Origin: Ascidiella aspersa
Lineage: Eukaryota
Reading direction: 5' to 3'
DNA: 64,000 bases
NCBI GenBank assembly: GCA_963924565.1
Contig: OZ004615.1
Span: 3,286,001 to 3,350,000, forward strand
In this document: in pieces, positions 11,501 through 64,000 of the stretch
Numbering within the stretch: the first letter of the stretch is position 1
Layout of the letters: each line of letters opens with the position of its first letter
Program-made: the position numbers and the translations under genes
The notes under the pieces: model-generated
What the model was told of the DNA's origin: nothing
The model's input: the letters and a program-made list of their open reading frames with translations, nothing else
The model's database searches: none

Positions 11501-14500
11501 TAAAACAATGCTTTCAAATATTTTTTGGCTTACAGCATCATATGGAATATACATCGCACACTTCCTAGCATTTAATTTGTTTAGTATCAAGTTAGCAAAA
11601 TTTAAGAACACGCATCAACAATGTTGGAGGCCATTTTTTTCATAGTCTACCTTGTAAAGTCAAATAATTCCATTAATAACCTTACTGAAAGAACAGTATT
11701 GGCAAAGCAGTGGCTCGAGACCCGCAAGCGTATGATGTTTGTAATGTTAGATATATAGTGAACAATATGGTATGCCAATTTGCCTAAAGTTACAAATTGA
11801 ATTGGGCAGTTACTCAAATCCTTATCTATAATTTTAAGCATGATCTATATTAAACGCGTTAACAGGGTGATTGCATGGAGGTCTTGGATATTTTTAATCA
11901 ATACATATTGTATGCGTAGTCTACTTATTATTGATGTTGTGTACCGTTTCCAACAAATCTGACTATATATGTGTAAGTGAGGATGAAACGATTATGTTCT
12001 GACCATGTGTCAGGGGTTGCTCTTCTTGGGTAACACAGTACGCTTGAGTCGCACTCGAGACTCAACAAAGTCGGTTTATTACGCTGGAGTCGGATTCGGG
12101 GCTCGATTAAGACTTACGTAAGACTGCCGATTCCCGAGTCCAACGTGCGCATGCGCAGTACCAAATTTTTAAACCGATGGCAGCAAACTGTGAATTGAAA
12201 AGGTAGAACATTTTGAAATATTTTCCAACCATGTGTTATGGGTGGGTGAGTTATATCAAACCCAGCTAAGTGGATTGCTGTATATACACCGCATTTTTGT
12301 TACGTAAATGGGTGGAATATAGGCTGCAAAGTCCTAATAGGAAAAGAGGCTCTACGAAGTTGGCAATTTGGCTAGAGTTAGAATCGACTTTATTTATTAG
12401 GAGGAATTCGTGCTCGGAAGTGGGCTATTAACAGACCCACAACCCTGGTCTCTAGATATCATTTAACATTCAGAGCGGCAACCCGGTTCGATGAACATAG
12501 CATTTAAACTAACCAAAAAAACAACGTTTTTAAAAGTGTATCGACGGCAACTTGCACACGATTGCATGCGATCCTGGAACCGCTTTTAACCCTGCAACCT
12601 CATCATGCGGCAGCCCAAGCAGCGTACCAGGCTGTGGACCGGTCAGTGGAACAACACCTGGACCATCAGGCAAGCCAAACTAGTTCAAAACTACTTATAT
12701 TATGACTGATGGACTGTTGATGTGCGCCGACACATTTTAAGGTTTATACCAGAGGTTTTTAAACTGTGCGTCGCGACGCCCTGGTGAGTTGTTTCAATTT
12801 TCTAAAAAAAGAACGTCGCACACTATTTGCGTTTTGTATGTATACTCGAAGGATCACTAATTAATTGCATAACTGTAAACAGAAAAAGTAATTTAAAGCC
12901 CATGTTATTCGATTTGCTAGTATTATATCGTAATGAAAAATGGTAAGGGTTCCAAATACAGAACCGGATTGTGACGTATTAAAACTGTGCGTCGCGACGC
13001 GATGGTGCGTCTTTTCAATATAATTGCCTTACACGCGCGATTAAACTCATTGTGACCGAAATAATGCAGCAACCTATTATAATTCTAAGATACAACAAAC
13101 AAATAATAAATCAATAAAGATAGATTTCTATCGCTTGGTTCGTCGCAAGACCAACAAACTTTTCCAATTGAGTCGCACGAAAAAAAGTTTGACAACCACT
13201 GGTTTGTATTATATAGAAACTCCGCATTAAAGCTTGTTTGCGACAACAACTTGTACATAACTGAACTCGTATCAAGGGGATTTTATTTCAGCCAAAGTTA
13301 CGAAATTTCTTCACCTGTTTGCTAGTTTGTTAGGCGTTTGATTGGCGGATTATTAATTTTAATATTGTTAGTAGAAGTAGTAATTTGAAGCCAGTTTTAT
13401 CACGTCTGCTAATGTTGTGTCGTAATAAAAAAAGTAAAGGTTCCAAGTTTCCAACTCTAAAGAACCGGTATGTCACCCCATGTACATATTGTCTGGCACT
13501 TATTACTGCGGCCGATTCAGAAGCTACAGTCAATGCTCTATATGGAGTTGATAGAAACTTTATTCTGGTACTGTGTGGCACATGAGGGCTTGACAAAGAT
13601 TTGACAATTAATGTGGGTTGTATACAGGACCATCATGCAAAGGACCGAACGGCGAACCTTTGAGCACAGAACCCTTTGAAAAGCCCGGCTCTTGCACACA
13701 GTTCTACCAATGCGGAGCAGGTAAGACTTTGATTCCAAGCCATAAAGGAATCAGGTGGCAGTATATAAAGACAATTTTTATTGATTCTCGACAAGCTTTT
13801 GCCCAAAACAATTTGACCTGACATATGCGCCCCCTGATTACCCTATTTAGAATTAGACAAATACGGCCATTCACAAAGGTTTTAAGTAATGTTTCTTAAC
13901 CTATTTAGGCGCCTTTACCCATGAAAAGAGCTTGTTGGGTTTAAACAGGTACTTTAAATAATGCAAAACTGCAGCCTGATCTAAAATGTTGAATAAACAA
14001 CTTCGGAACGACATATTAACAAAATAGGGATTACAAACGTAAACAAATGGATCGCTGAAGACTACTTCTTTCAGCTGTTCAAATACAGCATCTTACATCA
14101 CTGTTTATTCAAAGATTAATATAAAAAACAATTGCCAGCCCAAGTAAACAGTACAGTGGTTCGCATTACGCCACACTAGTTTATTGTGCATTCAGTAACT
14201 TGTGACTTTAGCTAATGACATGAATTGACAAACGTTTTATCAGTTTGATTGCACTTGTTTATTCAAATGGTGGTTGTAACGCTCCGAGTGAAGTTAGTTA
14301 ATTCTTGTTTCGCATTTGTATTTACATGTAATACTAATTATAATGACTTGGATTGATCAAAGAATGACTTATCAAGGACTAAAGTTATTTATAAAAAGAA
14401 TTGACTGGAACTTATCATGGAGAACAACCGGTTTTTAACACTGCTTATCATATGACCTCGCCCATTTGAAATAAAATATACTTTAAATAGTAAATTTTCG

Positions 14501-36600: not shown

Positions 36601-39600
36601 CTTTTACGTTGTTCGAAAAGTTTAGCAAATAGGATACACAGGGGTAGACAGGGACGGACTAAGGGTACTGTAGGCCTAAGACTGTTTGCTAGAGAAGGGC
36701 CTAGTTTTGCAAACCATAGCTACAAAAAGGAATAAAATTACATACATGAAAAATTAAAATTATACAATAATGAAACTGTGAGATAAATGATTAAATGATT
36801 AAACAATAAATGAGTTTTTTCTATGTGATACAGAGACAAGACAGCATAAATGGAACGATTTGTTTATCTACTCACACACAAGGCACATATTGACTCGACT
36901 TAGTCATTCGTTTTTACGCAAAAACTTGTAGTTGCACCTGTACTGGATCTGTATCACCATCAGCCTTGCACAAATTTAACCTTATTGAGGGCCGAATTGT
37001 TCCAGGGCTTAAGGCTATAACCATAGTGGCCTAATGGTTAATCTGGCACTGGATACTAGTAGATCAACTTTAAATACTAGTAAATCAACTCACAGGGATA
37101 ATTGGAAGTGCTGTGATGACTTAAGCCTTGACCCAAAAAGTGCACTTATATCACTGTTTTCAAATGACTTCACTTGAACTTTTGGACATAATATTTTCTG
37201 CATATCTAACTTTTTTGGCCATAATAACTTTACTGGAGGTATTTTTTACATTACCAAAACTCGGCAAGTTTTAGTTTTAGTAGTTCAATGTTTAATTTTT
37301 GTGTCAGTTACAGGACTCGAGTGTAGTTGATTTAATAAAGTCTCGACTTGGATTTGACTTGATTTTTTTTAAATATTGACTTGTTTAAGACGCTGTTAAC
37401 TGGCAATAATTGCTTCAGACGAGCGAGCGAGCGCGCGGAAAATCCCAACCCTGCGTTTTTTGAACGACGCGTGTTCCACAAACGCGACAATCGCCCCAAT
37501 GTATACGTAACAAATGTTGCATTTTCCCTGTAGAGAACAAGGTGTGTCAGGTCGACGGGAGATGGCGAGGACATGAGGAGAAGTTCTACAAGCTTAATCC
37601 TGCCGGTTACATGCAGAACTGCACTTGCACCAGACTGCCTAGCGGGGGTGGACGTTGGACATGCGATCCTATCGGTAAGAGTTCATTCACATGTGGTTTA
37701 GTGCTCTTTTAGGTGTAAAAATTCTGCAAATTTAAAATTGAAAAAATAGAGTCTAAATACATTTACAGAGTAGACAAAACCTTTTTGTTTAAATTGTACA
37801 ATACGACATCACTGAGGTCTCATAGACCGCATAAAGTCTACCTAGCACCAAGGGTTTAACGGAAACCATGTTAAGAACGCCTTGACTAGACTGAAAGACC
37901 TCGACAGATAAAGAAAATCAGTCGATCAAAAAGCAAAACAGTTTGAATCTCAACTCAGGCTAGTTGTTTTTTAACTTGCCTTGCATGCATCTTGATTGAC
38001 AGGTTTGGGTAATCTGTCGAAGGCTTTCCGTGAATTATGAAACATAAGCCGTTTCCGTTGTTCGAAAAACGACTTCCGAAGAGCTATCTCAGTTGTTCTA
38101 CGCGCATGTGAATGTATCTTCATTGGCTGAATGTGATTGTGTACTATAGACCATCTTAAATATAAATTTTATGCAGCAAGCAATTGTGTCACAGTTGCTT
38201 GTCGACTCGCTCTCCTCTGAGCCCTGTATAGATACAGTGGTTGTAATGTCCACGCATCTTTTATCCCTTGATTACGATATTAACATTTTCAATGCAATTC
38301 TATATAGTCTGCCTACACAACGGCATACAGCACGCGGTTGGCCAAACCTGGACCCAGCTTTCAAACGACGGAAATTACAACCAGGAGTGCACTTGCCTCA
38401 AGCGCGGCTGGAGATGTGTAGGAACTGGTGAGTTCGCTATGTAAAGGGTTCACAAAAATCCGCAGTAGTATAGTTCATTGTGCCCTGTTGGACGTTTCGA
38501 ACTTTTATGTACGTTTCGCTGGAGTGATTTAATTTGACCCATTTTTAGAAAGTTTAATTAGAATTGGAATCTAAAGCTTTGAAAAGCGTTTCATACTTTT
38601 TAACGTATTTTAAACGGTAGTCTAGCTTCCAACTGAGGTATATACTTGACTATACCTTTCTAAAGATATTTAAAGTTGAAAAAAACTACAATAATAAACG
38701 GCTCTGTATTTTTGATTACGGCCAATATAACAGTTGGCCAATTGAACGTAACCATTTTAAAATTTGACCGTGTTTGTCCTATTTTTGTTCGACTTTCTAA
38801 CCGCCAACGTTTGTTTAACAATGTTTATGAAGAATGAATTGCAAAAGCCAAATAGGTCGAACAGATCGACATCATCTTGATGACGTTACGTCTTCATCAA
38901 GATGATGTCGATATACGCGACGTTTTTTTGCTTTGCAATTCATTATGAAGAAAAAACTGCTGATTAAATTGTGTATTGTACCCGTTTTTTAACTTATTGC
39001 GTACAGGTCCGGCTGGTTTTCCGCAAGGCGATCTCTTGCGCCACCCAGAGGGCGGTCGACTGACGCTATCGTGTCCGCACGAGGTCACTGGCGACTTCCG
39101 CCCCACGATCAAATGGTACAAGCTAAATGGCGACGTGCGCACACTGCTGTACACTTATCACGGCCAGGGCGGTTTCGGCCACCAGGTAAATGGAACTATA
39201 CGACGTATTTTGTGAGGTTTAACGGCGCTTTGGAACAAATTCTAAAACACGGTTTTTTAACTTTTTTTCGCGGAGCCCAAATACTAAGCTCAAGTTAAGC
39301 AGCGAATCTCTGGCACCAAATAGACTTTTTGTAAGGCTTACTAAGAAATAATTTCGCAACACTGGTATTTTGGAAATCCCTACAGGCTTTCGCACAACCG
39401 CGCTTCATCAGGTCGAAGTATAAAACTTTATATCTATATAGCCTATCTTACTTACAGTGTAGGGCGGAAAGGGCGCGTCGTATTCCTGATATTCAAGCAC
39501 GTATCGCGACACCCCCTCGATGTTACTTGGTTGGTCCCACTCTACGGTGGCTTCGGTGGCTCTGACGAGTAGAAATGAAAGAAATTAAAATGATTTAAAT

Positions 39601-42600
39601 ATGCTTTCATTTATACATTGACCTAATGAAGCACAGTTATGCAAAAGCTTGTCGAGAATTCTATACAATTTGTCTATATATAGTGCCACCTGATTCCTCT
39701 ATTTAGAATTAGACAAATACGGTCATTTAGAAAGATCATAACTCAGAATTCAGGTTCATAAAAATTTCGTCCCACATTTTATAAGTCAATTACTTTCTCA
39801 TTACATTAACAGTCGATTACTTCTCAAGTCTCATTAAAGATAGTAAAAGTTCGTATCACAACGTCTTGATCAAGATGATATCGATCTATTCGACCTTTTT
39901 TGCTTTGCAATTCATTTTCGAACTACAAAGATTATTATTTTTAAATTTCTCCAACAATATTTTAAAACATGTGCAAATTCTTGAAAGAAAATCCAAAATT
40001 TCTACAAAACCGCTTTCAGGAAACGACGGCTGGCGACCTTTCGGGAAGGATGGACATGCCTAATGAGATAGAGCTGGAAATTAACCCGGTCCGTTTGTCC
40101 GACTCTGGTCGTTACGAGTGCGTGGTAACCTACAGAGGCCACTCTAGTGCTCCGGTCACCCACAGGGCAAGAATATTGGCGGTGAGTAGCGATGTCCGAT
40201 AATATCGGATCGGAGCCGATACCCGATGCCGAGTTAGAGTATCGATACTCGAACGATAATTGGGCGGTATCGATAAATGCCCGATACTTTGCTGATATCG
40301 CCAATCGTCCGATACTATGCTGGTATCGGTAATCGTCTCATAAGAGCTGTAGTTGTATGATCTAAATCTCGTTTAAAAGTGCCACCCGATATACAGACAA
40401 TCAACTACTTCTGATGAATAAATTACTATTCAAACCGACAACCAACGAGCAAATTTGACGAATTTTAAAATACCTGACTGTTAAAACTGCTTTTAACTTG
40501 GTTACAATGAAAGATACGCACTCATACGTGTTTAACAACTGTGATAAATGCCTTCTAAAATCCCTTTTTGATTAACGATAATGGCCTACGTATCATAGTA
40601 CACCAAAAGCCATTGCAGACTCACCGAATCAGTTGATCAATGTGAAAGCAAGGTAGGCTAAAGAGAGCCTCTAGGGTGGTGGAGCTCCCCTGGGCCGGAC
40701 TTGACTCCACGCCTTTCCCGGGGTTCATGGCCACAACGTCGACGTAGTAGAGTGTGTCAGGGAAAAGGTCTGAGTCAGAGGATAGGTTAATTTATTTATA
40801 AGTAAGTTGAAAAGTTAGTTTAGTTTTTAATGATTGGATCGTTTTGAAGTTCGCGGGAACGAGGGATTATTGGATCATGGTTTTTTTCGAGGCCGTCCGG
40901 AGGTCGTGAGTTCGAACCTCGGTGCAGGCTAGTTGTTTTTCTAGCCTACCTTGCTTGCATCATTGATCGAACGATTCAGTGAGTCTGCTATGGCTTCCGA
41001 TGTACACCTTACAAAGTTGAAGTTTAACCTCGTTTTGTTGCACACAGACCTACAACTTGGGCGAGTGGATTCCAGCGCCGCAAGTGACCAACTCTCAAAC
41101 CGACACAGTCGAACTCACGTGGGACGCACCTGACGAAAGAGTAACTGAATACATCGTGAAGTACACGTAAGTAGAACAGGCCTTATGGATGCTCGATTAT
41201 TTAATTGCGACACCGATACCCGATATATTTTGGACAAAACGTATGGCGATCCGATACCAAATGACGTCATTCATATGCTCCAACAAGCCAAATAGGTTAA
41301 ATTTAAACGTTCAAACGCTTTTTTTCATGTTATTTGGCCCAAATTTGCTTTAAAGTCAAAAAGTTTAGTTACCTCCTGTTGTTAACCTCGGCTACTATCA
41401 TTTTCCATAACTTTACCTTTCAAGTTTGAATCGGTGCGTTGGATCTCGCCTTGAAGGTTTGAAGCGAATTAGGTTTTAAGAACTAGGAATGTCCGATAAT
41501 ATCGGATCGGGTTCGATACCCGATGCCAAGTGCTAGTATCGGTACTCGTCCGATAATATCGGATCGGAGCCGAAACCCGATGCCAAGTGCTAGTATCGGC
41601 ACTCGTCCGATACTAGGGTGATATCGGTGCCGATTCGATACTAAATTAACATAGGTATTTTGACTTTGTCACCCAATGCAGGAATTTCTACGTTAAATAG
41701 TATATTCTCAAAAAAACTAGGCCAACAACTGATGGTGGTTAAATTATTTCAAACTATCAAAGATGTTGGCCATACAACCTAAGAAAATTAACCTTAAACG
41801 TTTTAATTAAAACTATTTTGTTTATTTAGGCATAGTTGTGACGTCATTGGTATATGGTAGGTGGCACTATATAAAGACAAAATTGTAAAAGCTTTCGCAC
41901 AACCGTGCCTCATCTGGTCAAAGTGATAATTTGTCTTTATATAGTGCCACCTGATTCCTCTATTTAGATTTGGACAAATACGGCCATTTACAAAGATCAC
42001 TTTATGTTCGTTCACGTTTATATTTTTACCAGCAACGTGGATCGTGAAAACGAGGAGCACACAGTCACAGTGAAGAACCCCTCGGTCGAACTCGACCAGC
42101 TTTCGCCTTCAGCCACCTACCGCATCACCGTCATACCTGTCGTGTGAGTTTTCGGGCTTTTGGTGGTGTAGACGTGCGGGAACGGCGTTTGCGCACCGCA
42201 TTTTGCCATCGCTTTCTACTAATGCTTGACACGCGGTACAAAACTTGACGTCATATTAAAAAAAACGCTTTGCCACAACTGAGTATACCAATATTTTAAA
42301 GCAAGTAATATACCTATTTCAATACGATTGAATTTTTAACATCGAATATTGAAAATCAAAATCCAATGAACTAAGTGATTTGGGATAAACTTAATTCTTG
42401 TTGAATAAAAGCAACAACGGTTGTGTTTATAAGATATTCCCAAAATGGCATAAATGTACTCGCTTGATAAGAAATATTTTCAAATTTTAAGGTAAAACAA
42501 TTCAATTGCCATTAAACTTAATGGCTTATTTTATATCACGACCGTAACGTTTTTAAAGTATTTTTTTACTTATAGCGAGCCACTTTTACTGTTAGTGGCA

Positions 42601-45600
42601 ACTCGAATACATCCGAATATAAAATTTTAGTATTTTTTTAAATAGCCTCATGGACAACTTACTACAATGAACCCGTGGCCAATTAATTAGCCTTGAACTG
42701 TTTTCTAAAGCCAACCAAAGACCTAACTTTAACCTAACCCTTCACAAGGGACGGAACACAAGGCGAATCCACCACATTCGAAGTTATCAGGGGTCAGGAC
42801 GGTCAGTCGGTCATTGGTCAGGTTCCAGGGGGTCCAGGCCCACTCGGGGACGACGAACCTCTCTTCACAACAGCCCCCCAGGCCACGACGGCCCCAACCG
42901 CGGCCCCTCTCGTGGCCCCAAGACCCCCTTCCCGGCTCCAGTTTGAATCGAAGGGTACAACATCGGTCACTGCAAGGTGGACAACACTTTTCGGACCAAC
43001 GGTGGACAGTTACAGGTTGGTTGGTTGGTTGTGGTAATGACTTATGCCAATGTCATATAAGTCAATGACAATGAGTGACTTGATTCAAGTGCACTTATGT
43101 CGCTATTTTTAAATAACTTGACTTGACTTATGATAGAAAAAATCGATAAAAACTCAATGATTATGTTAAAAGATTTAAATATCTATAAAGTTTCTTAAAG
43201 CAAAGTTGTAAACCTATGTTATTTTTTCGAACAGAGTGGAATACAAGCCGGTAGGTTCTCTCGAAGCACCTACAACACTAAGAACACGGAACAACTACTT
43301 GCGAGTGACGAACCTGGAGCCTGGTGAAAACTACACTTTCAGTGTTCGTTCGATTCAAGACGGTCTCGAAAGCATTCCTATCACTGCGATAGTCTCTCCG
43401 TGTAAGAACCAGATCAATAACCCACTTAATAATGTTTGTCAGAGTTATTTTTTATTAGGTCTGAGTCCGTTGAAAACAACCCGAGTCCAACTCCGGGAAA
43501 ATATTTAAACTCGAGTCCGAATCCCGACTACAACTCGACAGCTTGTATTCCACTGATTAACGCAACTAAAATAGAGTTAATATACAGTAATTCCAATAAA
43601 GAGGTCGTCATAAAACTCACTCACATATAGTTGGAAAAACATTTAACTATTTGCTATTCAACTTTTACAACTTGCAATTTGCGGCAGCCATACTTTCAAG
43701 TAATGGGATTTGCATAAGCCTTGGTCTTTATTTGATGCAAAGTTTTCGTTGTATTTTTTTGAGTCTACGAAACCAATCTTTATAGTGTAGAAGTCGGCTG
43801 ATTATGAGTTCTCATTAATACCTTGTTGCCCCGATCAATCACCTAACTTCTACAATGGGTAAACGGGTATACATAAAAGTGTAAAAAGTTTTTTATCAAT
43901 ATACCAAATTGTAAACAATGGTTTTACGATTTATCTGTCACTAACAGTCGGCGTAAATGTCATGCCAAACTGTCAATAGACATGTCTTTCATCATATTGA
44001 GCTCTGAAACCACCAACGACATTTCCAATTTACGACAAAACCTGCACTGGCCACTTGCCATCCACCTAAACACCAACTGTTCATGGCTAAATCGGAACTC
44101 GGTTTTATTTTGCCTTCCATTACATAAAAAGCAAATAATGTTTGCAAATTAAAAAAAAATAGTTTTTTTTTCTAACATCATTTCTCCAAACTGCCCAAAA
44201 AACATTTATTTTCTTATACTTAACACTGAAACCCACAATAAAATTTAACAATTACTACAATTGGCTACTCGCTATCTACCTAAAAGATAACCATTCATAT
44301 CAAAATCGGAATCTCGATTTTGTTTTGCTCTCCATTCTATAAAGTACATAATATAGATGATTTAGAAATGTTTAGAAACTGTGTTTTCCTCCAACAAAAT
44401 TTAACTCAGTTCTAGAATGCTACCACTTTTATACAATAGCGAAAACAAGTTGTTCAAAATGAAATTGCAAGAAATAAGCAAACATTGGGAAATAAATATA
44501 ATAATAATACCGGACCCACACAAACCTAAACGCTAACTCTCACCCTAACCCACATATTGTTATCAATATAAACCCCCGGACAAAAATATGGTAGGATTCT
44601 CAGTAAAGTACCCAAATATTGTTCCATACACATACCGCATCGGAAGCATACTGGCTTCTGGCTATCTACCTAAAAGCAAACCATTAGTGGCAAAAATCGG
44701 AATCACAATTTTTTTTAGCTCTCCACTTCCAACAACATTTAGCGCTGTTGAAGAATCCTACCACTTTTTCTAGAGTAACGAAACGAGTTGTCAAAAAAGA
44801 AATTGCAAATACTTGCCCCAGCCAACCCAAACCCTTGCTCGCACTATATCCCAAATATGGTTAGCAATATAAACCCGGATAAAACGGGGTAGGATACTAG
44901 ACCAGCGCTAAATGTTGTTGAAGGAAGACACATTTTATAAACATTTCTAAGTCATCTATAACATTTCTCCTACGCAGATCGCATCGGTAGCATTTTGGTG
45001 CAAGTAGAGAAGAATCGACGTCATTACGAGGTCGGCGACGACGCCACGCTTCAGTGCCGATATGACGTCGATACGCCAGGCAAGGCTGTGATCACGTGGT
45101 ACAAGCTGGGAGTCGGTCAAGCCAAGGACCTGATAATGACATACGACACTGCAACAGGGGCTCAAGTAAGTGTTGATCTTTGTTTGATCTTGATCGTTGT
45201 TTTTGAGTGCAGACACTCAGGAAAATTGTTGTATTTATTCCAATGCCAATGAAGGATTCCTACACATACGTGTACAACGACTGTGATCTCGACTCCCGGG
45301 TCCAGAGTCTTACACCGGCCAAATGTGCAAGTTCGTCGAGTCCCAGTTGGGCTCAGACTCTCAAATCTGTACGACATGACGAAAATCTTTAAAACGATTT
45401 GCGCATTGAAATGTTTTTTAATAATTTTTAAATTTGTTTGTGTTTTAAAAAGTCACGAAAGTCAAGAAATAAAACAATTTAGTATTTTTTTTTGTGTTGG
45501 CCCTGGCACTTGTGGAGTTTTGTTTTCAAATTACCTTCGAAAGAAAGTCGAGTGGTCTTATTTGAGGGTTCAAAACCCGTTTTTTTTATAAAGTGTGTCG

Positions 45601-57600: not shown

Positions 57601-60600
57601 TTTTCTATATTTCAAAAATTTTCCCTTTCAACTTTACTATATATATTGCACTTGCATTAGTTTGCCAGCCTATAAATAAGTATTTCTCGCTAAAAGTTTT
57701 TGCTGATGATGCTTTAAGTGCGACTGAATATCGGTTTACTAAGTGCTGTACTTAGCTTTATTTTTATCATTGATGTGCAACCAGTGTCGTTTGTTTTCCA
57801 CCATTCTTTTTACAAACAAAAAAAAATTCTTATTAGCAAAACATTAACGTCGTTTTTCTGCCCACAAAAAACAAAACAATTGCCAGCATAAAAAAAAAAA
57901 AAAAAACGCGCTGGTCTGTAGAAGCCTACCAGAACGCACCATATGCGGGTTAGGGTTATAGCGTTTTGGGTATAGGTTAAGCAAAATGAAATAATAAGTA
58001 TGATAAAAACAGTGCCAACAAAACTAGTTGTTATTTACAGGGCGACCGAATCATAAAGTACGGGCCTACCTTTACATTGGACGAACTCACACCAAGCACC
58101 GATTACACTATAACCCTTACCGCCGTGCGAAACGGTGTGAGATCGAACCCAGTCGAGATTTTGCTGACAACACCTGAAGAGGTAAGTTAAGCATATTTTC
58201 TTTTTGATTTATATGACTTCATTTCATTTCACATTTTTGAACGTCAGTAGGTTAATATAAGTTTTTTAAATTTGCATGATTTCATTTCAGTTTCACATTT
58301 TTTGGACCGAGAACAGCAAGTTTCTTAGGTTTATTGGTTTTATAACGTCCATTTATGACGTCACAATAAAAAAAAAAAAATTCGAGATTTTAAATTTCCC
58401 AAAAAATATTAATTGTTTTTTGAGTAAAACGCAAAGGGTATAGGACGATAGGACCTATACCTATGCTATAGGTACACTATACACCGATCTGTAATGTTAC
58501 TTAATAATGAATATTAAAGTCAAAAAGTCGAGTAAATTAACATCATGATGGCTCTTAAACAAAAATTAAACGCAAAAAGCTTTCCAACTGATTAAACGCC
58601 TATAAATTGGAAACAAAATATGACAGAAAAATGTTTATGTTGCAAAACGTTTAAAATAGAGGTATAAAATAAGTATTAAAAAACAGCTTTTTTTTGGCAT
58701 ATTGAAGCTTGACCACAAGAGTTTCCGTATTACTATGCATCTCAGAATTGGATCCGTTTTTTTGATGAATTTTTCCTTTAATAACAAACAAAATGAACAG
58801 AAACAACTCTTTAAAAGACAATATGCCTTATATTTAAACTCTCGTTATTTCGCCAGGTACCTAACGTGGGGCCGTCACAGCCGACCGGTTTAAGTCTTCT
58901 GGGAAAAAGTCCGACTGAAGCCAACTTCGAAGTGCTGGGTCCGACCGACCACGTGGACTTCTACCACATCGAATGGAAACCAGTGTCGCAGTTCGGACCG
59001 CCCCGTGTAAGAACACTTTCAACATTAGTGGGAATACTAAGCTCATATAGAAGTAGCTGAAACGTAAATATGAACAATGTGTATTCTGTGATCAAGCCCT
59101 TCTTGAGACAAAAAAAAGCAGTTTCCCAATTCGGACCACCGCGTGTAAGAACACTTTTATCGTTAGTGGGAATATCAAGCTCATATTAGAGAAGCAACTT
59201 TAACATACGTATACACAATGTGTGTTCCCGTGCATTTTAATTGCTTTGACTTCTACATTGACCTGATGAAGCAAGGTTGTGGTAAAGCTTGTCGAGAATT
59301 CAATGCACTTAAGAATTAAACAAATATGGCCATTTACAACGAAGTATATTCTGTTATCGAGATCGTCTTCTTACTGGCCAAGGACCCATTATATAGTACA
59401 CAAGATACATTCGGATAAGTTGATCAGTCAGCCTGCTAATCAGGGTTCAAGCAAGGCCAGGCTGAAAAACAACTATAGCCTGTGGTGGGGTTCGAACTCA
59501 CGACCTCCGGTCATTCCGGGACCCTAGTTCCTCAACTGAGCTACATATAGGTTCAAAGGGACGTCGAGAAACAACCCTAGCACCATTGCATATAGTAGGT
59601 AACACTTAGAACGTTAGGAAAACTCTTTATTTATCTTCAACCTGCTATATGGGCTTCGATATTTTAACTACCTCGAACAAAAATCTCAAACTTTTAACAT
59701 TCATATGTGTGGCTGCGCGCGAATTTTTTCACATTTCGTGAATGTGGATCAACTATATGGGCATTAAGACGGCAATTGCTGTCCAACACCTTACTGCAAC
59801 CTCGAAACATTATGACAAAATCTTGCTGTGATTAAAATAAAATCCCAAAATTGTCAAGCGAGGAAACATTTGTTAAGATATAACAGAAACATCTAACGGA
59901 AGTGTTAAACGTCTTTATACTACAAAACTTAAGGCCAAACAGCAAATGAGATAGAGAGCGATGTTCAAGTGAAGATAGAACACAAAGCAACCACAAAAAT
60001 GTAATATTTATATCCATATTTTACCCCGGTAACGGCAAAAACGTTGAAGAAAAGAGGAAACGTTTGAAAAAAAGAGTGGAAACAAGATCTTTCCTTCTTG
60101 TCAAATATTCCAGCTGAACTTTATTATTTTCATCATCTAAATTTGCAATGATTGTGAAAATGAATAAAGAGTTGTTTTCAAAACGATCAAAATGATAGCT
60201 AATTTCTGGGCTTTGGTATTCTTACTACGTCTTCCTAAAACCTCCAACCATTATACTCCAAAGTTATTCTTTAAAAAAAGTTGTTCCATTACTTTTCGTA
60301 TTTTTTTCGGATTTCTTTTTAATCACGTCGACTTTGTAATGTGATTTAGACCCGGGACACCGTTAATTCGAGAAACGAGATTCTGCTCACCCAGCTGATT
60401 CCATCGACAAGATACAGGATCCTTGTGAAGGCGGTGAAGAACAACATAGACTCGCAGCCCGTTACGGAATACTTCGTCACCAAGAGGGTAAAAATCACTT
60501 TTTTTGTTCGGCTTTGCTGTTATTTGGTTATAATTGATAAACATTTTCCACGAAAAAGATATAATTTAATAAAAATTTTCCACAAAAATGTTATAATTTA

Positions 60601-62215
60601 ATAAAAAAAATCCAAGAAATGGTTAAAAATGACAAAACAATTTTTTTTTTTCGGAGAAAAAATATCCGATCTGCAAAGTATTAAGTCCGATATTTTTACA
60701 GCTTCCGTCTGACGTGGAGTCCATCACCCCTAGCAACCTGCGGACTACTGACGTCAGACCCACCCAAGCCACCGTAGAGTGGGACCAACCAAGTAACCTC
60801 GACGGGGTGTCGCGATACGTGCTCGAATATCGAATTGATAATCCCTTCCAGCCCTACATTGTAAGTGATATATATATACAAAAACTATTGGACTTGTTTA
60901 CAATACTAAAAGTTTTGAAACTTTGAGTTTTTTTGTTTCTAAGTGAAATGTAAATATATAAAGGCGTATCTTTTGGAATCCAACCCATTTGCAGCAGGTT
61001 TCTGCTTGTCGATCACTGCTCTGCGTAGATAAAAAAAGTAAAACTCAAAGTGAAACACAGAATCAGACATTTTTAAATGGGTTTTTAAAACTTTGAGTTT
61101 TTTGTTGTTTGTAAGTGAGATGTATATAAGGGTGTATCTTTATGGAATCCGAAACCGTTGGCAGCATGTTTCTGCTTGTCAATCATTGTTTTTGTTTTGT
61201 TTGTAAGTAGTCGATATTGTGCGGTGATTGTCAAACTACAGGTTCTTCACAATTTTTTGGGCTAGTTTTGACGCAGTTGTTGATTTTGCGTGACCCCCTA
61301 TAGCAAAAAATAACCTAAAAATCACGCATTGGTAAGGTTTTCTTTAAAAAGACACTTGAATGCCAAATATCATGTTGTTGTTCCGTTGTTTTATCGTCAG
61401 TTGATTTAATGTGGTATTTTTTTCTCTTATTTTAGTATTCATAAAAAAATGTCGTAAATTATTATTTTCTTAAATAATAATTTAAAACATTAGTTTGGTC
61501 ATTATGCGAGAATTTAATTGTCGCAGTTAGTTCTAAATAAAAAAAAAATGCAAAAAAACACAAAGCAAGACACAAGAAAATCTGTAAAAGGTTGAAGACA
61601 TATATCGATGTCGTGCGTTTTTACACTGCCTAAAGTGCACTTAAGTCAAGTCATAATCAAGTCATTGTCTTAAGTCATTACCACACTTGTTTTAAATGAT
61701 TAAGAATTGGAACACAAAACTAGATACAAGAAAATCGGTAAAGACATATATCGATGTCGTACATTTTTACAGTGCCTAAAGTACACTTAAATCAAGTCAT
61801 GATCAAGTCATTGTCTTAAGTCATTACCACACTTGTTTTAAATGATTAAGAATTGGAACACAAAACTAGATACAAGAAAATCGGTAAAGACATATATCGA
61901 TGTCGTGCGTTTTTACAGTGCCTAAAGTACACTTAAATCAAGTCATGATCAAGTCATTTTCTTAAGTCATTACCACACTTGTTTTAAATGGTAAAGAATT
62001 ACAAAGCAAAACCAGACAATCTCCCAAACGGAGTCGTACGTTTTTGGAGTCGATTTTAACTCGACATTTCATTTCAACAGCGGAAGACCATTCATTCCTC
62101 CAACACTCACTCTGTCCTGACCCGGCTTCAACCGGGAACCACCTACACCGTTAAACTGTCCCCGATCAAGGGAGGAAGAAAAATACCCGACGCCATCAAC
62201 GCCACTTTCACAACG
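21545..62215 (+). CDS. FN: Fibronectin (tunicate-type, with interspersed Ig domains); 5' part only, 42 exons, ~2,090 aa, continues past the window
   Basis: In-frame GT-AG exons: 21545-21605, 22255-22485, 23107-23222, 24006-24162, 24743-24904, 26249-26431, 27157-27326, 28084-28239, 29955-30068, 31382-31556, 32254-32385, 32749-32900, 33557-33699, 34529-34651, 35130-35285, 36407-36582, 37534-37674, 38308-38427, 39007-39185, 40020-40181, 41048-41166, 42033-42143, 42749-43015, 43235-43401, 44978-45165, 45690-45860, 46454-46558, 47273-47440, 47898-48044, 49064-49201, 50350-50487 (or 50496), 51389-51529, 53091-53234, 53820-53954, 54691-54816, 55791-55931, 56737-56862, 58041-58181, 58857-59006, 60350-60487, 60702-60860, 62081-62215. 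FN1, FN2 and FN3 modules together in one secreted protein are diagnostic of fibronectin. Confidence 0.9.
22255..24162 (+). CDS. FN: Fibronectin exons 2-4: three FN1-like modules
   Basis: C..CxC..C patterns: CVDKQG..WKCRC..SC; CVANGQEYAVGQTW..CVC..YRC; CRSR..ICSC..NC. Confidence 0.75.
24743..26431 (+). CDS. FN: Fibronectin exons 5-6: two FN2 modules (first degenerate, second canonical)
   Basis: CQFPFLYNGEVFSTC..C..C and GGNANGAKCHFPFTLGGQQHYSCVTELNRPSWCATTANYDVDGRYGYC. Confidence 0.92.
27157..28239 (+). CDS. FN: Fibronectin exons 7-8: Ig domain 1 (V-set-like)
   Basis: GENVTLECRY...IKWYK...LQIVNMRIEDAGTFEC. Confidence 0.9.
28902..29224. mobile_element. PIF/Harbinger-type MITE with internal tandem repeats
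   Basis: TIR AGGCC(T/C)GTTTACACTACAGCTGCACTG at both ends, TAA on both flanks, and three internal gctgcac.gggctt.agtttagcaaagcgt units. Confidence 0.8.
29955..36582 (+). CDS. FN: Fibronectin exons 9-16: four FN3 repeats
   Basis: Each repeat has the B-strand W and a LxPxTxYxVxV-type motif (e.g. DLESNTRYRVTLFA, NLMPSKIYDVHV). Confidence 0.88.
30150..30700. mobile_element. Repeat element with (GGTTC)n subterminal arrays
   Basis: Two GGTTC-rich arms (30160-30330 and 30585-30695) sharing caaaaccggttcataaagttccggttcg. Confidence 0.6.
35329..35549. mobile_element. Young 221-bp MITE (Merlin- or MULE-like ends)
   Basis: Perfect 23-bp TIR GGCGCTCTTTCACTATTGTACGT; perfect 8-bp TSD CAATTTTT. Confidence 0.9.
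37534..38427 (+). CDS. FN: Fibronectin exons 17-18: internal FN1 pair
   Basis: CQVDGRWRGHEEKFYKLNPAGYMQNCTCTRLPSGGGRWTCDP and CLHNGIQHAVGQTWTQLSNDGNYNQECTCLKRGWRC; each is a single phase 1-1 exon. Confidence 0.88.
39007..40181 (+). CDS. FN: Fibronectin exons 19-20: Ig domain 2
   Basis: EGGRLTLSC...IKWYK...LEINPVRLSDSGRYEC. Confidence 0.9.
39456..39561 (-). pseudogene. Antisense intronic copy of an FN3 first-half exon with both splice sites
   Basis: Minus strand reads tttctttcatttctactcgtcag|A-ATEATVEWDQPSNIEGVSRYVLEYQEYDAPFPPYT|gtaagt; paralogous to sense exon 60702-60860. Confidence 0.85.
40665..40769 (-). pseudogene. Antisense intronic FN3 second-half exon fragment
   Basis: Minus strand reads ctatcctctgactcag|(D)LFPDTLYYVDVVAMNPGKGVESSPAQGSSTTLE; no donor; ends against a repeat arm. 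Confidence 0.75.
41048..43401 (+). CDS. FN: Fibronectin exons 21-24: two FN3 repeats separated by a Gly/Pro/Thr/Ala-rich linker
   Basis: VELTWDAP..QLSPSATYRITV; linker GQVPGGPGPLGDDEPLFTTAPQATTAPTAAPLVAP; NLEPGENYTFSV. Confidence 0.87.
41185..41660. mobile_element. CCGATAC-rich interspersed repeat (related copies at 7340-7715, 11277-11340, 40189-40335)
   Basis: Shared gatgtccgataatatcggatcgg..cgatacccgatgcc end; internal 58-bp tandem duplication at 41490-41610. Confidence 0.7.
44978..45860 (+). CDS. FN: Fibronectin exons 25-26: Ig domain 3
   Basis: GDDATLQCRY...ITWYK...FRGRV...FRIADLGPTDGGTYEC. Confidence 0.9.
46454..62215 (+). CDS. FN: Fibronectin exons 27-42: eight FN3 repeats, two phase-0 exons each
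   Basis: GLKPGRTY, NMLPDTQY, NLEPDTQY, GLLPDSDY, DLTPGTRY, ELTPSTDY, QLIPSTRY and RLQPGTTY motifs; every exon length is a multiple of 3. Confidence 0.9.
49546..49836. mobile_element. hAT-type MITE, same family as 52630-53041
   Basis: CAGTGCTTCTCAACC...GGTAGAGAACCACTG ends; shared atatctctcggca..ttgagc.ttaaaaatg.cacc block. Confidence 0.75.
52630..53041. mobile_element. hAT-type MITE (family members also at 49546-49836, 34101-34402 inverted, and ~400-452)
   Basis: CAGTGTTTCGCAACC...GGTTAAGAACCACTG ends; 8-bp TSD gtttacct/gtctacct; 3' internal block shared with 49760-49836. Confidence 0.85.
53258..53690. mobile_element. GACTTGACTTAAGTC-rich repeat family (also ~31605, 37110, 43030, 46850-47241 inverted, 50827-51297, 55120, 56059, 61630)
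   Basis: Common end CAGTGTTGTAATGAC and dense gacttga/cttaagtc motifs. Confidence 0.75.
55230..55760. repeat. Nested tandem duplications (~300-bp unit plus ~55-60-bp units)
   Basis: aaattgactaaattaaatcg.ttcaaaatggcgct twice; aatcgatgaa...tctttcaacc three times, with a related unit at ~55325. Confidence 0.8.
59394..59545 (-). mobile_element. tRNA-derived SINE-like repeat (related copies 40890-41005 and 37955-38015)
   Basis: Minus strand has A-box TAGCTCAGTTG and B-box GTTCGAACC followed by a shared body (caggct..agttgtttt..gcct..cttgcttg); no intact cloverleaf. Confidence 0.7.
61570..61995. repeat. 146-bp tandem repeat, three copies
   Basis: aagacatatatcgatgtcgt at 61595, 61741 and 61887; copies nearly identical. 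Confidence 0.92.
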
Positions 62216-64000
62216 GTTCGTGTCATTTTTTTCAAGTTTTTTTAAACGGGGTGTGGTGATTTTGTCGCGCTTTTCTGTATTGTGTCCTTTGATGGGCGGA
62301 AACAGCTTAATCACAAACAAACAGAAGTCATTATCTGTTGTGATTGCGTAGACTCACACCCAGGCTGGCAGAATCTTGCCAGCCTTCTGGTGACAAGCAT
62401 TTTGGGCGAAAATTCTGTGGTTTTTGGTCGCGCCCCTAAACTTAAATGATGTGTTCGCCAAAGGAATGTATGAACCTTGCCATGTTTTGGCGATAAACAA
62501 GGCTATTAATAATAAAATTAGACAAGAAAACGTAGCGCCGAAGGCGCAAAAAATTTTGTGACATGAAGTCATTAACAAATACATAAGGGACATGTGAAGG
62601 TACAACCTGGGGCCTGGGGATGTACGTACATGTCTGCTTTTCTTGCTTTAAAAGTGTTACATAGATAAGCTGTTTTCAGGCAAACTTGTGTGAAAACGTG
62701 CTGCTCAAAACCAGATTAAAAAGCACGAAAAAATATTCTTTGGCTAAATTTCCAATTTATATTGCTCAAAATAATGATATTTATAATAAAATGTAATAGA
62801 AATTGTCACAGTCACATTGCAACGTGCCCCATAGTATGCATATTACCTTTGGGATAGATTTGTTGAAAACAAAGACACATAAACGTAAAAAAACCAGGCT
62901 AAAGATTTTTGCATTTGCATAATTAAACAACCAAAAATATACTTTAGGCCTTAGGGGGAGAAGCATAGCCTGGTACATCCTTAATATGCCGATGCGAATG
63001 TTATACCTGTACATTTAACAGAAATGGGGAATTCAACTCAATATACAGGAAATCAACTAAATATAGCAGTACTTGCCAATTCAAAGTAAAACTGCCAACA
63101 CGTAACAATTGTATGATCAAAAATGTGTACTTTTTAAAATAATAAACAGTCTATATGCCTTACACTGGCTTTTTCTCACTTCACACTACCTTAACTTTTT
63201 TCAAAATGACACAACAAAATTAATTTCTGCCCATTGTAGTGTGTAATGTTATTACTTATTACATATTTCCGCTTTTCAAAAATATATGTGATTAAATATG
63301 TGTGGAAACAACCACAAGGTATTTTGAAAATTGGATGTTGAAAAAAACTTCAAAAAAAAAACTTCCGAAAAAAAAAGAAAAATTTTTTTTTTTTTTTTTT
63401 TTTTAAATTTTTCTTTTTTACTTGAATTTTTTTTTTGTACCAATTTCTTCAGTTTTCTGGCTGATTCTTTGGCCGACATAGTCGCCAAGTCGCCAGCATT
63501 CTGCCATACTGCTCACACCACTAATCAACACTCAATTTACTGTTTCCTATGTTTAAATTGATTTAGGCTGATTTTAATGTGCTGAATCCAAAAATAACAT
63601 TGGTTTTGCTTTATTAGGTCAAATTTTTTTACCTTCAACATTTATTTTATTTATTTTTTTCTATTCAAAAGTGTTTAACACTTTTCAATTGATTCAGAAT
63701 GATTTTGGTGTGAGGAAATTAAAAACAAGAATGACTTTCTTTTTTTGAGTTTTTCATTTTTAGATTCTGAACATATCACATTTTTTTCCCTTTTTTGAAG
63801 GTTAAAAGTAATAAAAGACTCATTAGTATATGTAAGCAACTAATAACAAGCTATAGTGCAATAGCTAGGGCTCCTTGATGCTTGAATTACAAACACAAAG
63901 TGAGGATGAAACACGATCAAAATCACCTGGACCAACAGACGAGTTAAAGCACATGAGTACGAGGAAAGCATGTAACAGTTGTAAGTGTTCAAAATGGCAC

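What the first reader, a model, noticed from the sequence alone, without database searches (positions are those of the whole stretch)
39456..39561. Complete antisense FN3 exon inside a fibronectin intron, complementary to an exon 21 kb downstream
Seen: in the intron splitting Ig2, the minus strand carries a 106-nt exon with a polypyrimidine-CAG acceptor and a GTAAGT donor, reading ATEATVEWDQPSNIEGVSRYVLEYQEYDAPFPPYT. Sense exon 60702-60860 reads PTQATVEWDQPSNLDGVSRYVLEYRIDNPFQPYI with the same donor position. They share a 32-nt perfect run and ~5 mismatches over ~78 nt, and the only indel is in frame (3 nt). Inference: it derives from a coding sister repeat, probably a further FN3 repeat downstream of the window, rather than being a decayed copy of this exon. 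In the pre-mRNA it could pair with the target exon(s) across the 5' splice site, acting as a built-in antisense splice switch (analogous to Dscam docking/selector pairing) or as an ADAR/siRNA substrate. Alternatively it belongs to an antisense nested transcript.
Basis: partly seen in the sequence, partly recalled or inferred. Interest (0 to 1): 0.85.

Follow-up and report, generated by a model that had tools for sequence, protein, structure and literature searches.

The report
Backwards exon fragment pasted into intron repeat
A 143-base piece spanning the end of a downstream FN3 exon and the start of its intron was pasted backwards into an old repeat inside an upstream intron of the same gene; it looks like a neutral DNA-repair patch, not a working exon or a proven splicing switch.

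Summary
The antisense FN3 sequence is real. Window 39435-39572 (minus) matches exon 60702-60860 (84%) and a sister exon 947 bp past the window's end (85%). These are the only three copies in the 308-Mb genome.

It is not a complete exon. It holds the last 109-112 nt of a 159-nt exon, the donor, and about 31 nt of the parent's intron. The "CAG acceptor" is the parent's internal coding sequence placed next to repeat-derived pyrimidines.

The 143-bp insert (39425-39567) cleanly splits one arm of a palindromic copy of a very abundant repeat. It lies 17-25 nt from the palindrome centre and is flanked by an imperfect 8-bp duplication.

Its seven private changes show no coding constraint. The host intron (39186-40019) is spliced normally in transcript contigs, and no splice joint uses the fragment.

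Best reading: a neutral templated insertion from a donor in cis. The antisense splice-switch idea could not be tested directly, because no reads were laid on the target exon. Nothing in the anatomy supports it.

The scan noted similar things before: a second backwards FN3 fragment in the next intron (s1-801928, checked here) and an antisense exon-piece in another gene of this genome (s1-806543, not checked).

The parts
39425..39567 (-). The 143-bp insert: an inverted copy of a genomic or pre-mRNA stretch spanning an FN3 exon-intron boundary
   Evidence: BLAST to 60745-60878 (84%) and to the sister exon (85%). With 39425-39574 removed, the repeat arm reads continuously against the family consensus.
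39456..39567 (-). Exon-derived part (112 nt, matching parent 60752-60860 plus the 3 nt that the parent later lost). An open frame of 35 codons runs 39560-39456.
   Evidence: fn3 E 0.071. Private changes fall at codon positions 1,1,3,1,2,3,2.
39425..39455 (-). Intron-derived part: the inherited GTAAGT donor and about 25 further nt of the parent's intron
   Evidence: Three-way alignment columns 191-221. This shows the template was unspliced.
39417..39424 (+). Left copy of the 8-bp target duplication (AGTATAAA)
   Evidence: The family consensus has this 8-mer once; the window has it on both sides of the insert.
39568..39575 (+). Right copy of the duplication (AGTAGAAA, one mismatch). Its first 5 nt can also be read as a continuation of the parent exon after a 2-nt gap (microhomology).
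   Evidence: Parent-exon contigs of run X3 leave the window sequence at 39567 (table 7).
39374..39424 (-). Outer piece of the repeat's left (inverted) arm
   Evidence: 43-52 bp at 84-93% to the family, in inverted orientation, unit positions 17-59.
39576..39592 (-). Inner piece of the left arm, abutting the palindrome centre at about 39592
   Evidence: Alignment of 39560-39600 to the left-orientation consensus.
39593..39736 (+). Right arm plus the fixed 3' tail of an abundant repeat family (at least 1793 first-look candidates genome-wide)
   Evidence: 87-91% identity to about 40 scored copies. The family is 224-1311 bp long, with a fixed 3' end, a variable 5' end and 11-12-bp target duplications.
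39186..40019 (+). Host intron (834 nt, GT..AG, phase 0) splitting an Ig domain of the plus-strand CBM14-Ig-FN3 gene
   Evidence: Spliced contig joint 39182>40017 (cut +3) in run X3. Ig half-domain matches of the flanking exons.
60702..60860 (+). Parent-lineage FN3 half-exon (159 nt). Its tandem sister lies outside the window at C9:3350947-3351102.
   Evidence: fn3 E 1.1e-4.

Best explanation
The feature is a neutral templated insertion. An older, palindromic, internally deleted copy of an abundant repeat already lay in the 834-nt intron that splits the Ig domain. A staggered break then occurred in one arm, 17-25 nt from the palindrome's centre. The break was patched with a 143-nt copy of unspliced sequence from the same gene, 21-25 kb downstream: the last ~112 nt of an FN3 half-exon plus ~31 nt of its intron, in inverted orientation. 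This left an 8-bp duplication of the target.

The exon-like look on the minus strand is inherited or accidental. The donor and the open frame come from the parent. The acceptor arises from the chance juxtaposition of the parent's internal CAG with the repeat's T-rich arm. Since insertion the piece has drifted, with 7 private changes (~6%).

Shown: the anatomy, the copy number, the cis donor, the lack of coding constraint, and normal splicing of the host intron. Inferred: that a break at the palindrome tip started the event, whether the template was DNA or pre-mRNA, and neutrality.
For: - Only three genomic copies by DNA and by protein search, all in this gene.
- Homology includes about 31 nt of the parent's intron and lacks the exon's first 43-50 nt.
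- Removing 39425-39574 restores a continuous repeat arm, and the 8-mer is present on both sides.
- The arms belong to a family with at least 1793 candidate hits. The right arm is ~12% diverged from other copies, so it is older than the insert that splits the element.
- Private changes: 5 at codon positions 1-2 and 2 at position 3, as expected without selection.
- The host intron is removed at GT..AG in transcript contigs of run X3, and no listed joint lies at 39456 or 39561.
- Four partial exon copies lie in this gene's introns, which marks a duplication-prone locus.
- Templated patches with and without target duplications are a described class (PMC5110952). Inverted templated insertions by template switching are also described (PMC8421209).
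Against: - The insert has a target duplication but no poly(A) tail or LINE-type target, so it fits neither published TSIP class cleanly.
- Five of the eight duplicated bases could instead be parent sequence.
- Neutrality is inferred from only 7 substitutions.
- The RNA run X4 had zero depth on the host exons.
- Presence in a second haplotype rests on a contig that reaches only 19 nt into the insert, below the tool's 31-nt bridging rule.
Confidence: 0.8

Rival explanations
1. Built-in antisense arm. In the pre-mRNA, the plus-strand RNA of 39425-39567 pairs with exon 60702-60860 and/or its sister across their 5' splice sites. This would cause regulated skipping, or create a long dsRNA that is edited or diced.
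For: - Predicted duplexes of -198 and -200 kcal/mol cover the donor.
- Both arms are in one transcription unit.
- Functional pairing over about 30 kb is known in ATE1 (PMC7797038).
Against: - Ordinary inverted repeat pairs in the same pre-mRNA reach -100 to -205 kcal/mol, so the pairing potential is not special.
- Every private change in the copy weakens the pairing: 17 mismatches plus a 3-nt bulge against 60702.
- The arm lies in a short 834-nt intron that is spliced normally, roughly 20 introns upstream of the target. It is probably removed before the target is transcribed (inference).
- Parent-exon contigs are present in transcript run X3, so at least one target exon is included (table 7).
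- As far as I know, proven long-range splicing structures are short, intronic and conserved between species.
Confidence: 0.07
2. Gene-fragment capture by the repeat itself (Pack-type transduplication). The element picked up the exon piece and carried it into this intron.
For: - The fragment lies inside a repeat between inverted arms.
- The next intron holds a second FN3 piece joined to another repeat, and the same repeat-plus-exon arrangement recurs 50 kb downstream.
- A Pack-hAT case was reported in this genome (s1-788244; not checked here).
Against: - The insert interrupts one arm and carries its own target duplication. It does not replace the element's interior.
- No other copy of the repeat carries it; there are only three genomic matches.
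- The family has a fixed 3' end, variable 5' truncation and 11-12-bp duplications. It therefore behaves like a retroposon, not a cut-and-paste element repaired by gap filling.
Confidence: 0.08
3. A real minus-strand exon of a nested antisense transcript.
For: A consensus GTAAGT donor, a plausible pyrimidine-CAG acceptor and an open frame of 35 codons.
Against: - All three features are explained by inheritance or juxtaposition.
- The best-supported joints in transcript contigs are all plus-strand GT..AG.
- No partner exons are known.
- Substitutions ignore the frame.
Confidence: 0.03

Closest known systems
Templated sequence insertions / TSIPs (Onozawa & Aplan; PMC5110952)
   Same: A short stretch copied from elsewhere (including unspliced intronic or genic sequence) is pasted at a break. 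Class 1 shows a target duplication of at least 5 bp; class 2 shows microhomology.
   Different: This insert has no poly(A) tail and no TTTT/A target (class 1). It has a duplication, which class 2 lacks. The donor is in cis, 21-25 kb away in the same gene, rather than at a distant locus.
MMBIR/FoSTeS templated insertions (PMC8421209)
   Same: An inverted copy of a nearby template, with possible microhomology at a junction and an association with a secondary-structure-prone site.
   Different: The events catalogued in that paper are mostly copied from within 100 bp. Here the template is about 21 kb away, and the target shows an 8-bp duplication.
Pack-MULE / Pack-type transduplication
   Same: A host exon fragment lies between inverted repeat arms of a mobile element.
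   Different: The fragment splits an arm instead of lying in the element's interior. It has not been amplified. The carrier family looks retroposed.
Dscam docking/selector pairing and long-range splicing structures (PMC12962786, PMC2724269, PMC7797038)
   Same: Complementary segments within one pre-mRNA, kilobases apart, that could act on splice-site choice.
   Different: In the cited cases the structures are conserved between species, and as far as I know they are short and lie in introns next to the regulated exons. This is a ~112-nt decaying copy of an exon, many introns away, with no conservation or splicing evidence.

Membership tests
Class 1 templated sequence insertion (LINE-mediated) | Target-site duplication of at least 5 bp | tested here: met
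   An 8-bp duplication, 7 of 8 identical, at 39417-24 and 39568-75. Five of its bases could alternatively be parent sequence.
Class 1 templated sequence insertion (LINE-mediated) | Poly(A) tract and upstream polyadenylation signal at the 3' end of the insert | tested here: not met
   Neither end of 39425-39567 carries an A or T run beyond the target sequence.
Class 2 templated sequence insertion (break patch) | No duplication; microhomology, microdeletion or non-templated bases at the junctions | tested here: inconclusive
   A possible 5-nt microhomology (AGTAG) at the right junction, but a duplication is present and the arm has no deletion.
Pack-type transduplicating element | The captured fragment lies between intact termini and moves with the element (multiple copies, or an element-level target duplication enclosing it) | tested here: not met
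   The fragment occurs once and interrupts an arm with its own duplication. About 40 other scored copies lack it.
Functional long-range RNA structure regulating splicing | Conservation of complementarity (compensatory changes) across species | not testable with these tools
   No relatives' genomes were reachable. An exon-peptide search found none. Within the genome, all 7 private changes reduce the pairing.
Functional long-range RNA structure regulating splicing | Alternative use of the paired exon or splice site | not tested
The target exon at 60702-60860 was not examined.
Spliced exon (minus strand) | Splice junction reads at both boundaries | tested here: inconclusive
   None among the best-supported joints, but 244 joints were not listed. 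Run X4 does not express the locus, and X3 is contigs only.

The most novel reading that the evidence does not exclude
The insert is one instance of a recurrent process in this genome. Breaks in introns would be patched with inverted copies of downstream exon-intron sequence from the same gene, for example copied from the nascent pre-mRNA or by template switching in cis. Some of the resulting exon-complementary arms would then act as dsRNA-forming regulators of their parent exons.

Two such backwards FN3 pieces lie in adjacent introns here. The scan also noted an antisense exon-piece in an upstream intron of another gene.
Probability: 0.1. Interest if true: 0.6.

Novelty: new member of a known kind. 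Interest (0 to 1): 0.25.

Why it matters
As it stands, this is a well-resolved example of how exon-like "ghosts" arise in introns. A repair patch copied from the same gene lands in a fragile palindromic repeat and inherits a perfect donor and an open frame. This is a useful warning for gene prediction and for sequence-only readings of antisense exons.

It would matter more if such same-gene, inverted patches prove to be systematically frequent in this genome. That would point to a cis-biased template choice in break repair. It would matter more still if the exon-complementary arm measurably affects splicing or editing of the FN3 array.

Tried and rejected
- RNA run X4 (raw reads): zero depth on the host exons. 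Its only reads here lie on repeats at 90-95% likeness, so it says nothing about antisense transcription or editing.
- Runs X1-X3 are contigs that break at repeats. None spans the insert. X2's contig 39277-39443 reaches 19 nt into it, below the 31-nt bridging rule.
- An exon-peptide search for relatives (Ig half-exon, 65 aa) found no candidate, so cross-species presence or absence was not tested.
- Rfam and tRNA scans of 38000-42500 gave only two sub-threshold chance matches and no tRNA.
The consensus was then rebuilt from the alignment file.
Exons were handled one by one by reference.
- Rejected: reverse-transcriptase template jumping during the repeat's own retroposition. It would need an antisense RNA of the parent exon and two switches.
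- Rejected: a decayed large inverted duplication. The insert has sharp ends inside a continuous repeat arm.
- The first script to pair the repeat's two ends printed nothing, because the ends are asymmetric. This was solved.

Full report
**What is there**

It has a weak fn3 match (E 0.071). A GTAAGT donor follows, and a pyrimidine-rich CAG precedes it.

BLAST within the window aligns 39435-39572 with 60878-60745 at 117/140 identities, E 2e-34. A whole-assembly DNA search finds only three places:
- the copy itself;
- exon 60702-60860 (84%);
- a sister exon at C9:3350984-3351108 (85%), which begins 947 bp beyond the window's end.

A protein search with the parent exon finds the same three places and nothing else. 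The match is therefore real and far beyond chance, and the donor pool is this gene alone.

**Context**

The window is G000:C9:3286001-3350000 of a 308-Mb assembly.

The plus-strand host gene encodes chitin-binding (CBM_14, E 8e-10), Ig and many half-FN3 exons. Spliced contigs in run X3 show the host intron to be 39186-40019 (834 nt, GT..AG), between two exons that match the N and C halves of Ig profiles.

Exon 60702-60860 and its partner exon around 62075-62263 are tandemly duplicated about 4.2-4.4 kb downstream.

**It is a fragment, not a complete exon**

- In the three-way alignment, homology to both sisters begins at the parent's CGTCAG (60752). This is 50 nt into the 159-nt exon, or 43 nt if a 2-nt gap is allowed.
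- Homology runs through the donor for about 31 nt into the parent's intron. The template was therefore unspliced: genomic DNA or pre-mRNA.
- The "acceptor" CAG is the parent's internal coding sequence. The pyrimidine tract upstream of it is the reverse complement of the flanking repeat.
- The in-frame 3-nt indel belongs to the 60702 lineage. The copy and the sister both carry those 3 nt.

**Where it sits**

- 39593-39736 is the terminal 144 bp of a very abundant repeat. A first look gave at least 1793 candidates, and about 40 scored copies are 87-91% identical.
- 39374-39424 is a piece of the same unit in inverted orientation.
- A consensus was built from ten fuller copies. It shows that 39576-39592 is the inner continuation of that inverted arm, meeting the right arm at a palindrome centre near 39592.
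- When 39425-39574 is removed, the left arm reads continuously against the consensus.
- The 8-mer AGTATAAA occurs once in the consensus. In the window it stands on both sides of the insert: 39417-24, and 39568-75 as AGTAGAAA.
- So a 143-bp insert (39425-39567) cleanly interrupts one arm, 17-25 nt from the palindrome centre, with an imperfect 8-bp target duplication.
- Five of those bases can alternatively be read as parent sequence after a 2-nt gap, that is, as microhomology. Parent-exon contigs in run X3 leave the window sequence exactly at 39567 (table 7).

The repeat family has these properties:
- lengths of 224 to 1311 bp;
- a fixed 3' tail;
- variably truncated 5' ends;
- target duplications of about 11-12 bp.

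It therefore behaves like a retroposed, SINE-like element with long internal inverted arms. The copy in this intron is a short palindromic derivative, like several others.

**Descent and constraint**

Over 109 exon columns the copy has 7 private changes, exon 60702 has 9 plus the 3-nt deletion, and the sister has 9.

Seven of the nine changes private to 60702, and its deletion, fall in one 14-column loop cluster. Outside that cluster the copy differs from 60702 at 8/98 sites and from the sister at 15/98.

The simplest history is a copy from the 60702 lineage (or from the common ancestor) made before that exon's loop region was remodelled. The parent cannot be fixed with so few sites.

The copy's private changes fall at codon positions 1,1,3,1,2,3,2. 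Five would change the amino acid. That is what drift gives, and each change also weakens the complementarity.

The right arm is ~12% diverged from other family copies and the insert ~6% on its own branch. This is consistent with an insert younger than the repeat it splits.

**Expression**

- The only raw-read RNA run (X4) had zero depth on the host exons and covered only repeats. It is uninformative.
- Run X3 behaves like a transcript assembly. Its joints are plus-strand GT..AG introns of the host gene, including 39186-40019.
- No listed joint uses 39456 or 39561, although 244 lesser joints were not shown.
- The DNA-like runs X1 and X2 carry the region. X2 is a different haplotype upstream (30 differences in 2.1 kb), and it has a contig reaching 19 nt into the insert. 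That is suggestive, but it falls below the tool's bridging rule.

**Pairing potential**

The plus-strand RNA of the insert could form a duplex of about -198 kcal/mol with either sister exon, across its donor. Ordinary inverted repeat pairs in the same pre-mRNA give -100 to -205 kcal/mol, so this potential is not distinctive.

The arm lies in a short, normally spliced intron roughly twenty introns upstream of the target. I infer that it is usually gone before the target is made. Pairing over 30 kb is documented in ATE1 (PMC7797038), so distance alone does not exclude function.

**Interpretation**

The best-supported reading (0.8) is a neutral templated insertion. A staggered break near the tip of a hairpin-prone repeat was patched with an inverted copy of unspliced sequence from 21-25 kb downstream in the same gene.

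It resembles published templated sequence insertions (PMC5110952) and template-switch insertions (PMC8421209), but it fits no class exactly. It has a duplication, no poly(A), and a cis donor.

Rivals:
- functional antisense arm (0.07);
- Pack-type capture by the repeat (0.08);
- real minus-strand exon (0.03).

**Neighbours**

The next intron holds a second backwards FN3 piece (40661-40941). I found its source 50 kb downstream (C9:3376295-3376603). There the same repeat-plus-exon arrangement recurs: 333 bp at 85% identity, with the exon part at 95%.

Self-comparison also shows local duplicates of exon ends at 44262-44960 and 58977-59227, matching earlier notes. The locus is thus prone to small duplications. 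Two independent inverted patches from the same gene argue for a cis bias in template choice. I could not measure how general this is.

**Limits**

- No relatives' genomes were reachable.
- Skipping and editing of the target exon remain untested.

Noticed in passing
window 40661-40941 (minus), arms 40598-40660 / 40942-41005: A second backwards FN3 exon piece in the next intron. It is a 333-bp copy (85% overall, exon part 95%) of a repeat-plus-exon arrangement found at G000:C9:3376295-3376603 (L067:1295-1603), about 50 kb downstream. So the repeat and the exon piece were copied together, or one chimeric unit exists twice.
   Followed up: partly
L005-L033 (e.g. L026:335-1645, L029:1500-1739); window 39593-39736, 13742-13878, 41859-41999, 59234-59342: A very abundant repeat family (at least 1793 candidate hits) with long internal inverted arms, a fixed 3' tail of about 34 bp outside the arms, variable 5' truncation, sizes of 224-1311 bp and target duplications of about 11-12 bp. 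This is a retroposon-like insertion signature on a hairpin-shaped element. The superfamily was not identified.
   Followed up: partly
window 60639-60884 and 62075-62263 vs L064 (window-equivalent 64872-65128 and 66458-66643): Tandem duplication of a whole two-exon FN3 unit, with a period of about 4.2-4.4 kb. The first half-exons are 82-85% identical and the second half-exons 74%. In exon 60702-60860 a 14-column loop segment was remodelled (7 substitutions plus a 3-nt deletion).
   Followed up: partly
window 44262-44960 and 58977-59227: Local direct and inverted duplicates of exon starts and ends next to their exons (74-113 bp, 79-83% identity).
   Followed up: no
window 38833-38944 and 39860-39916: Another palindromic repeat (114 bp, self-complementary at 77%) just upstream of the Ig exon, with a related piece inside the same intron as the insert. 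Rfam gives a sub-threshold miRNA-precursor-like match (MIR4374, 25.7 bits against a gathering score of 105), which is most likely chance.
   Followed up: no
run X3 on window 37200-43100: A run of unrecorded kind behaves like a transcript assembly. It gives host-gene joints 37673>38307, 38426>39006, 39182>40017, 41166>42033 and 42143>42749 (all GT..AG), which fix five introns of the gene model.
   Followed up: yes
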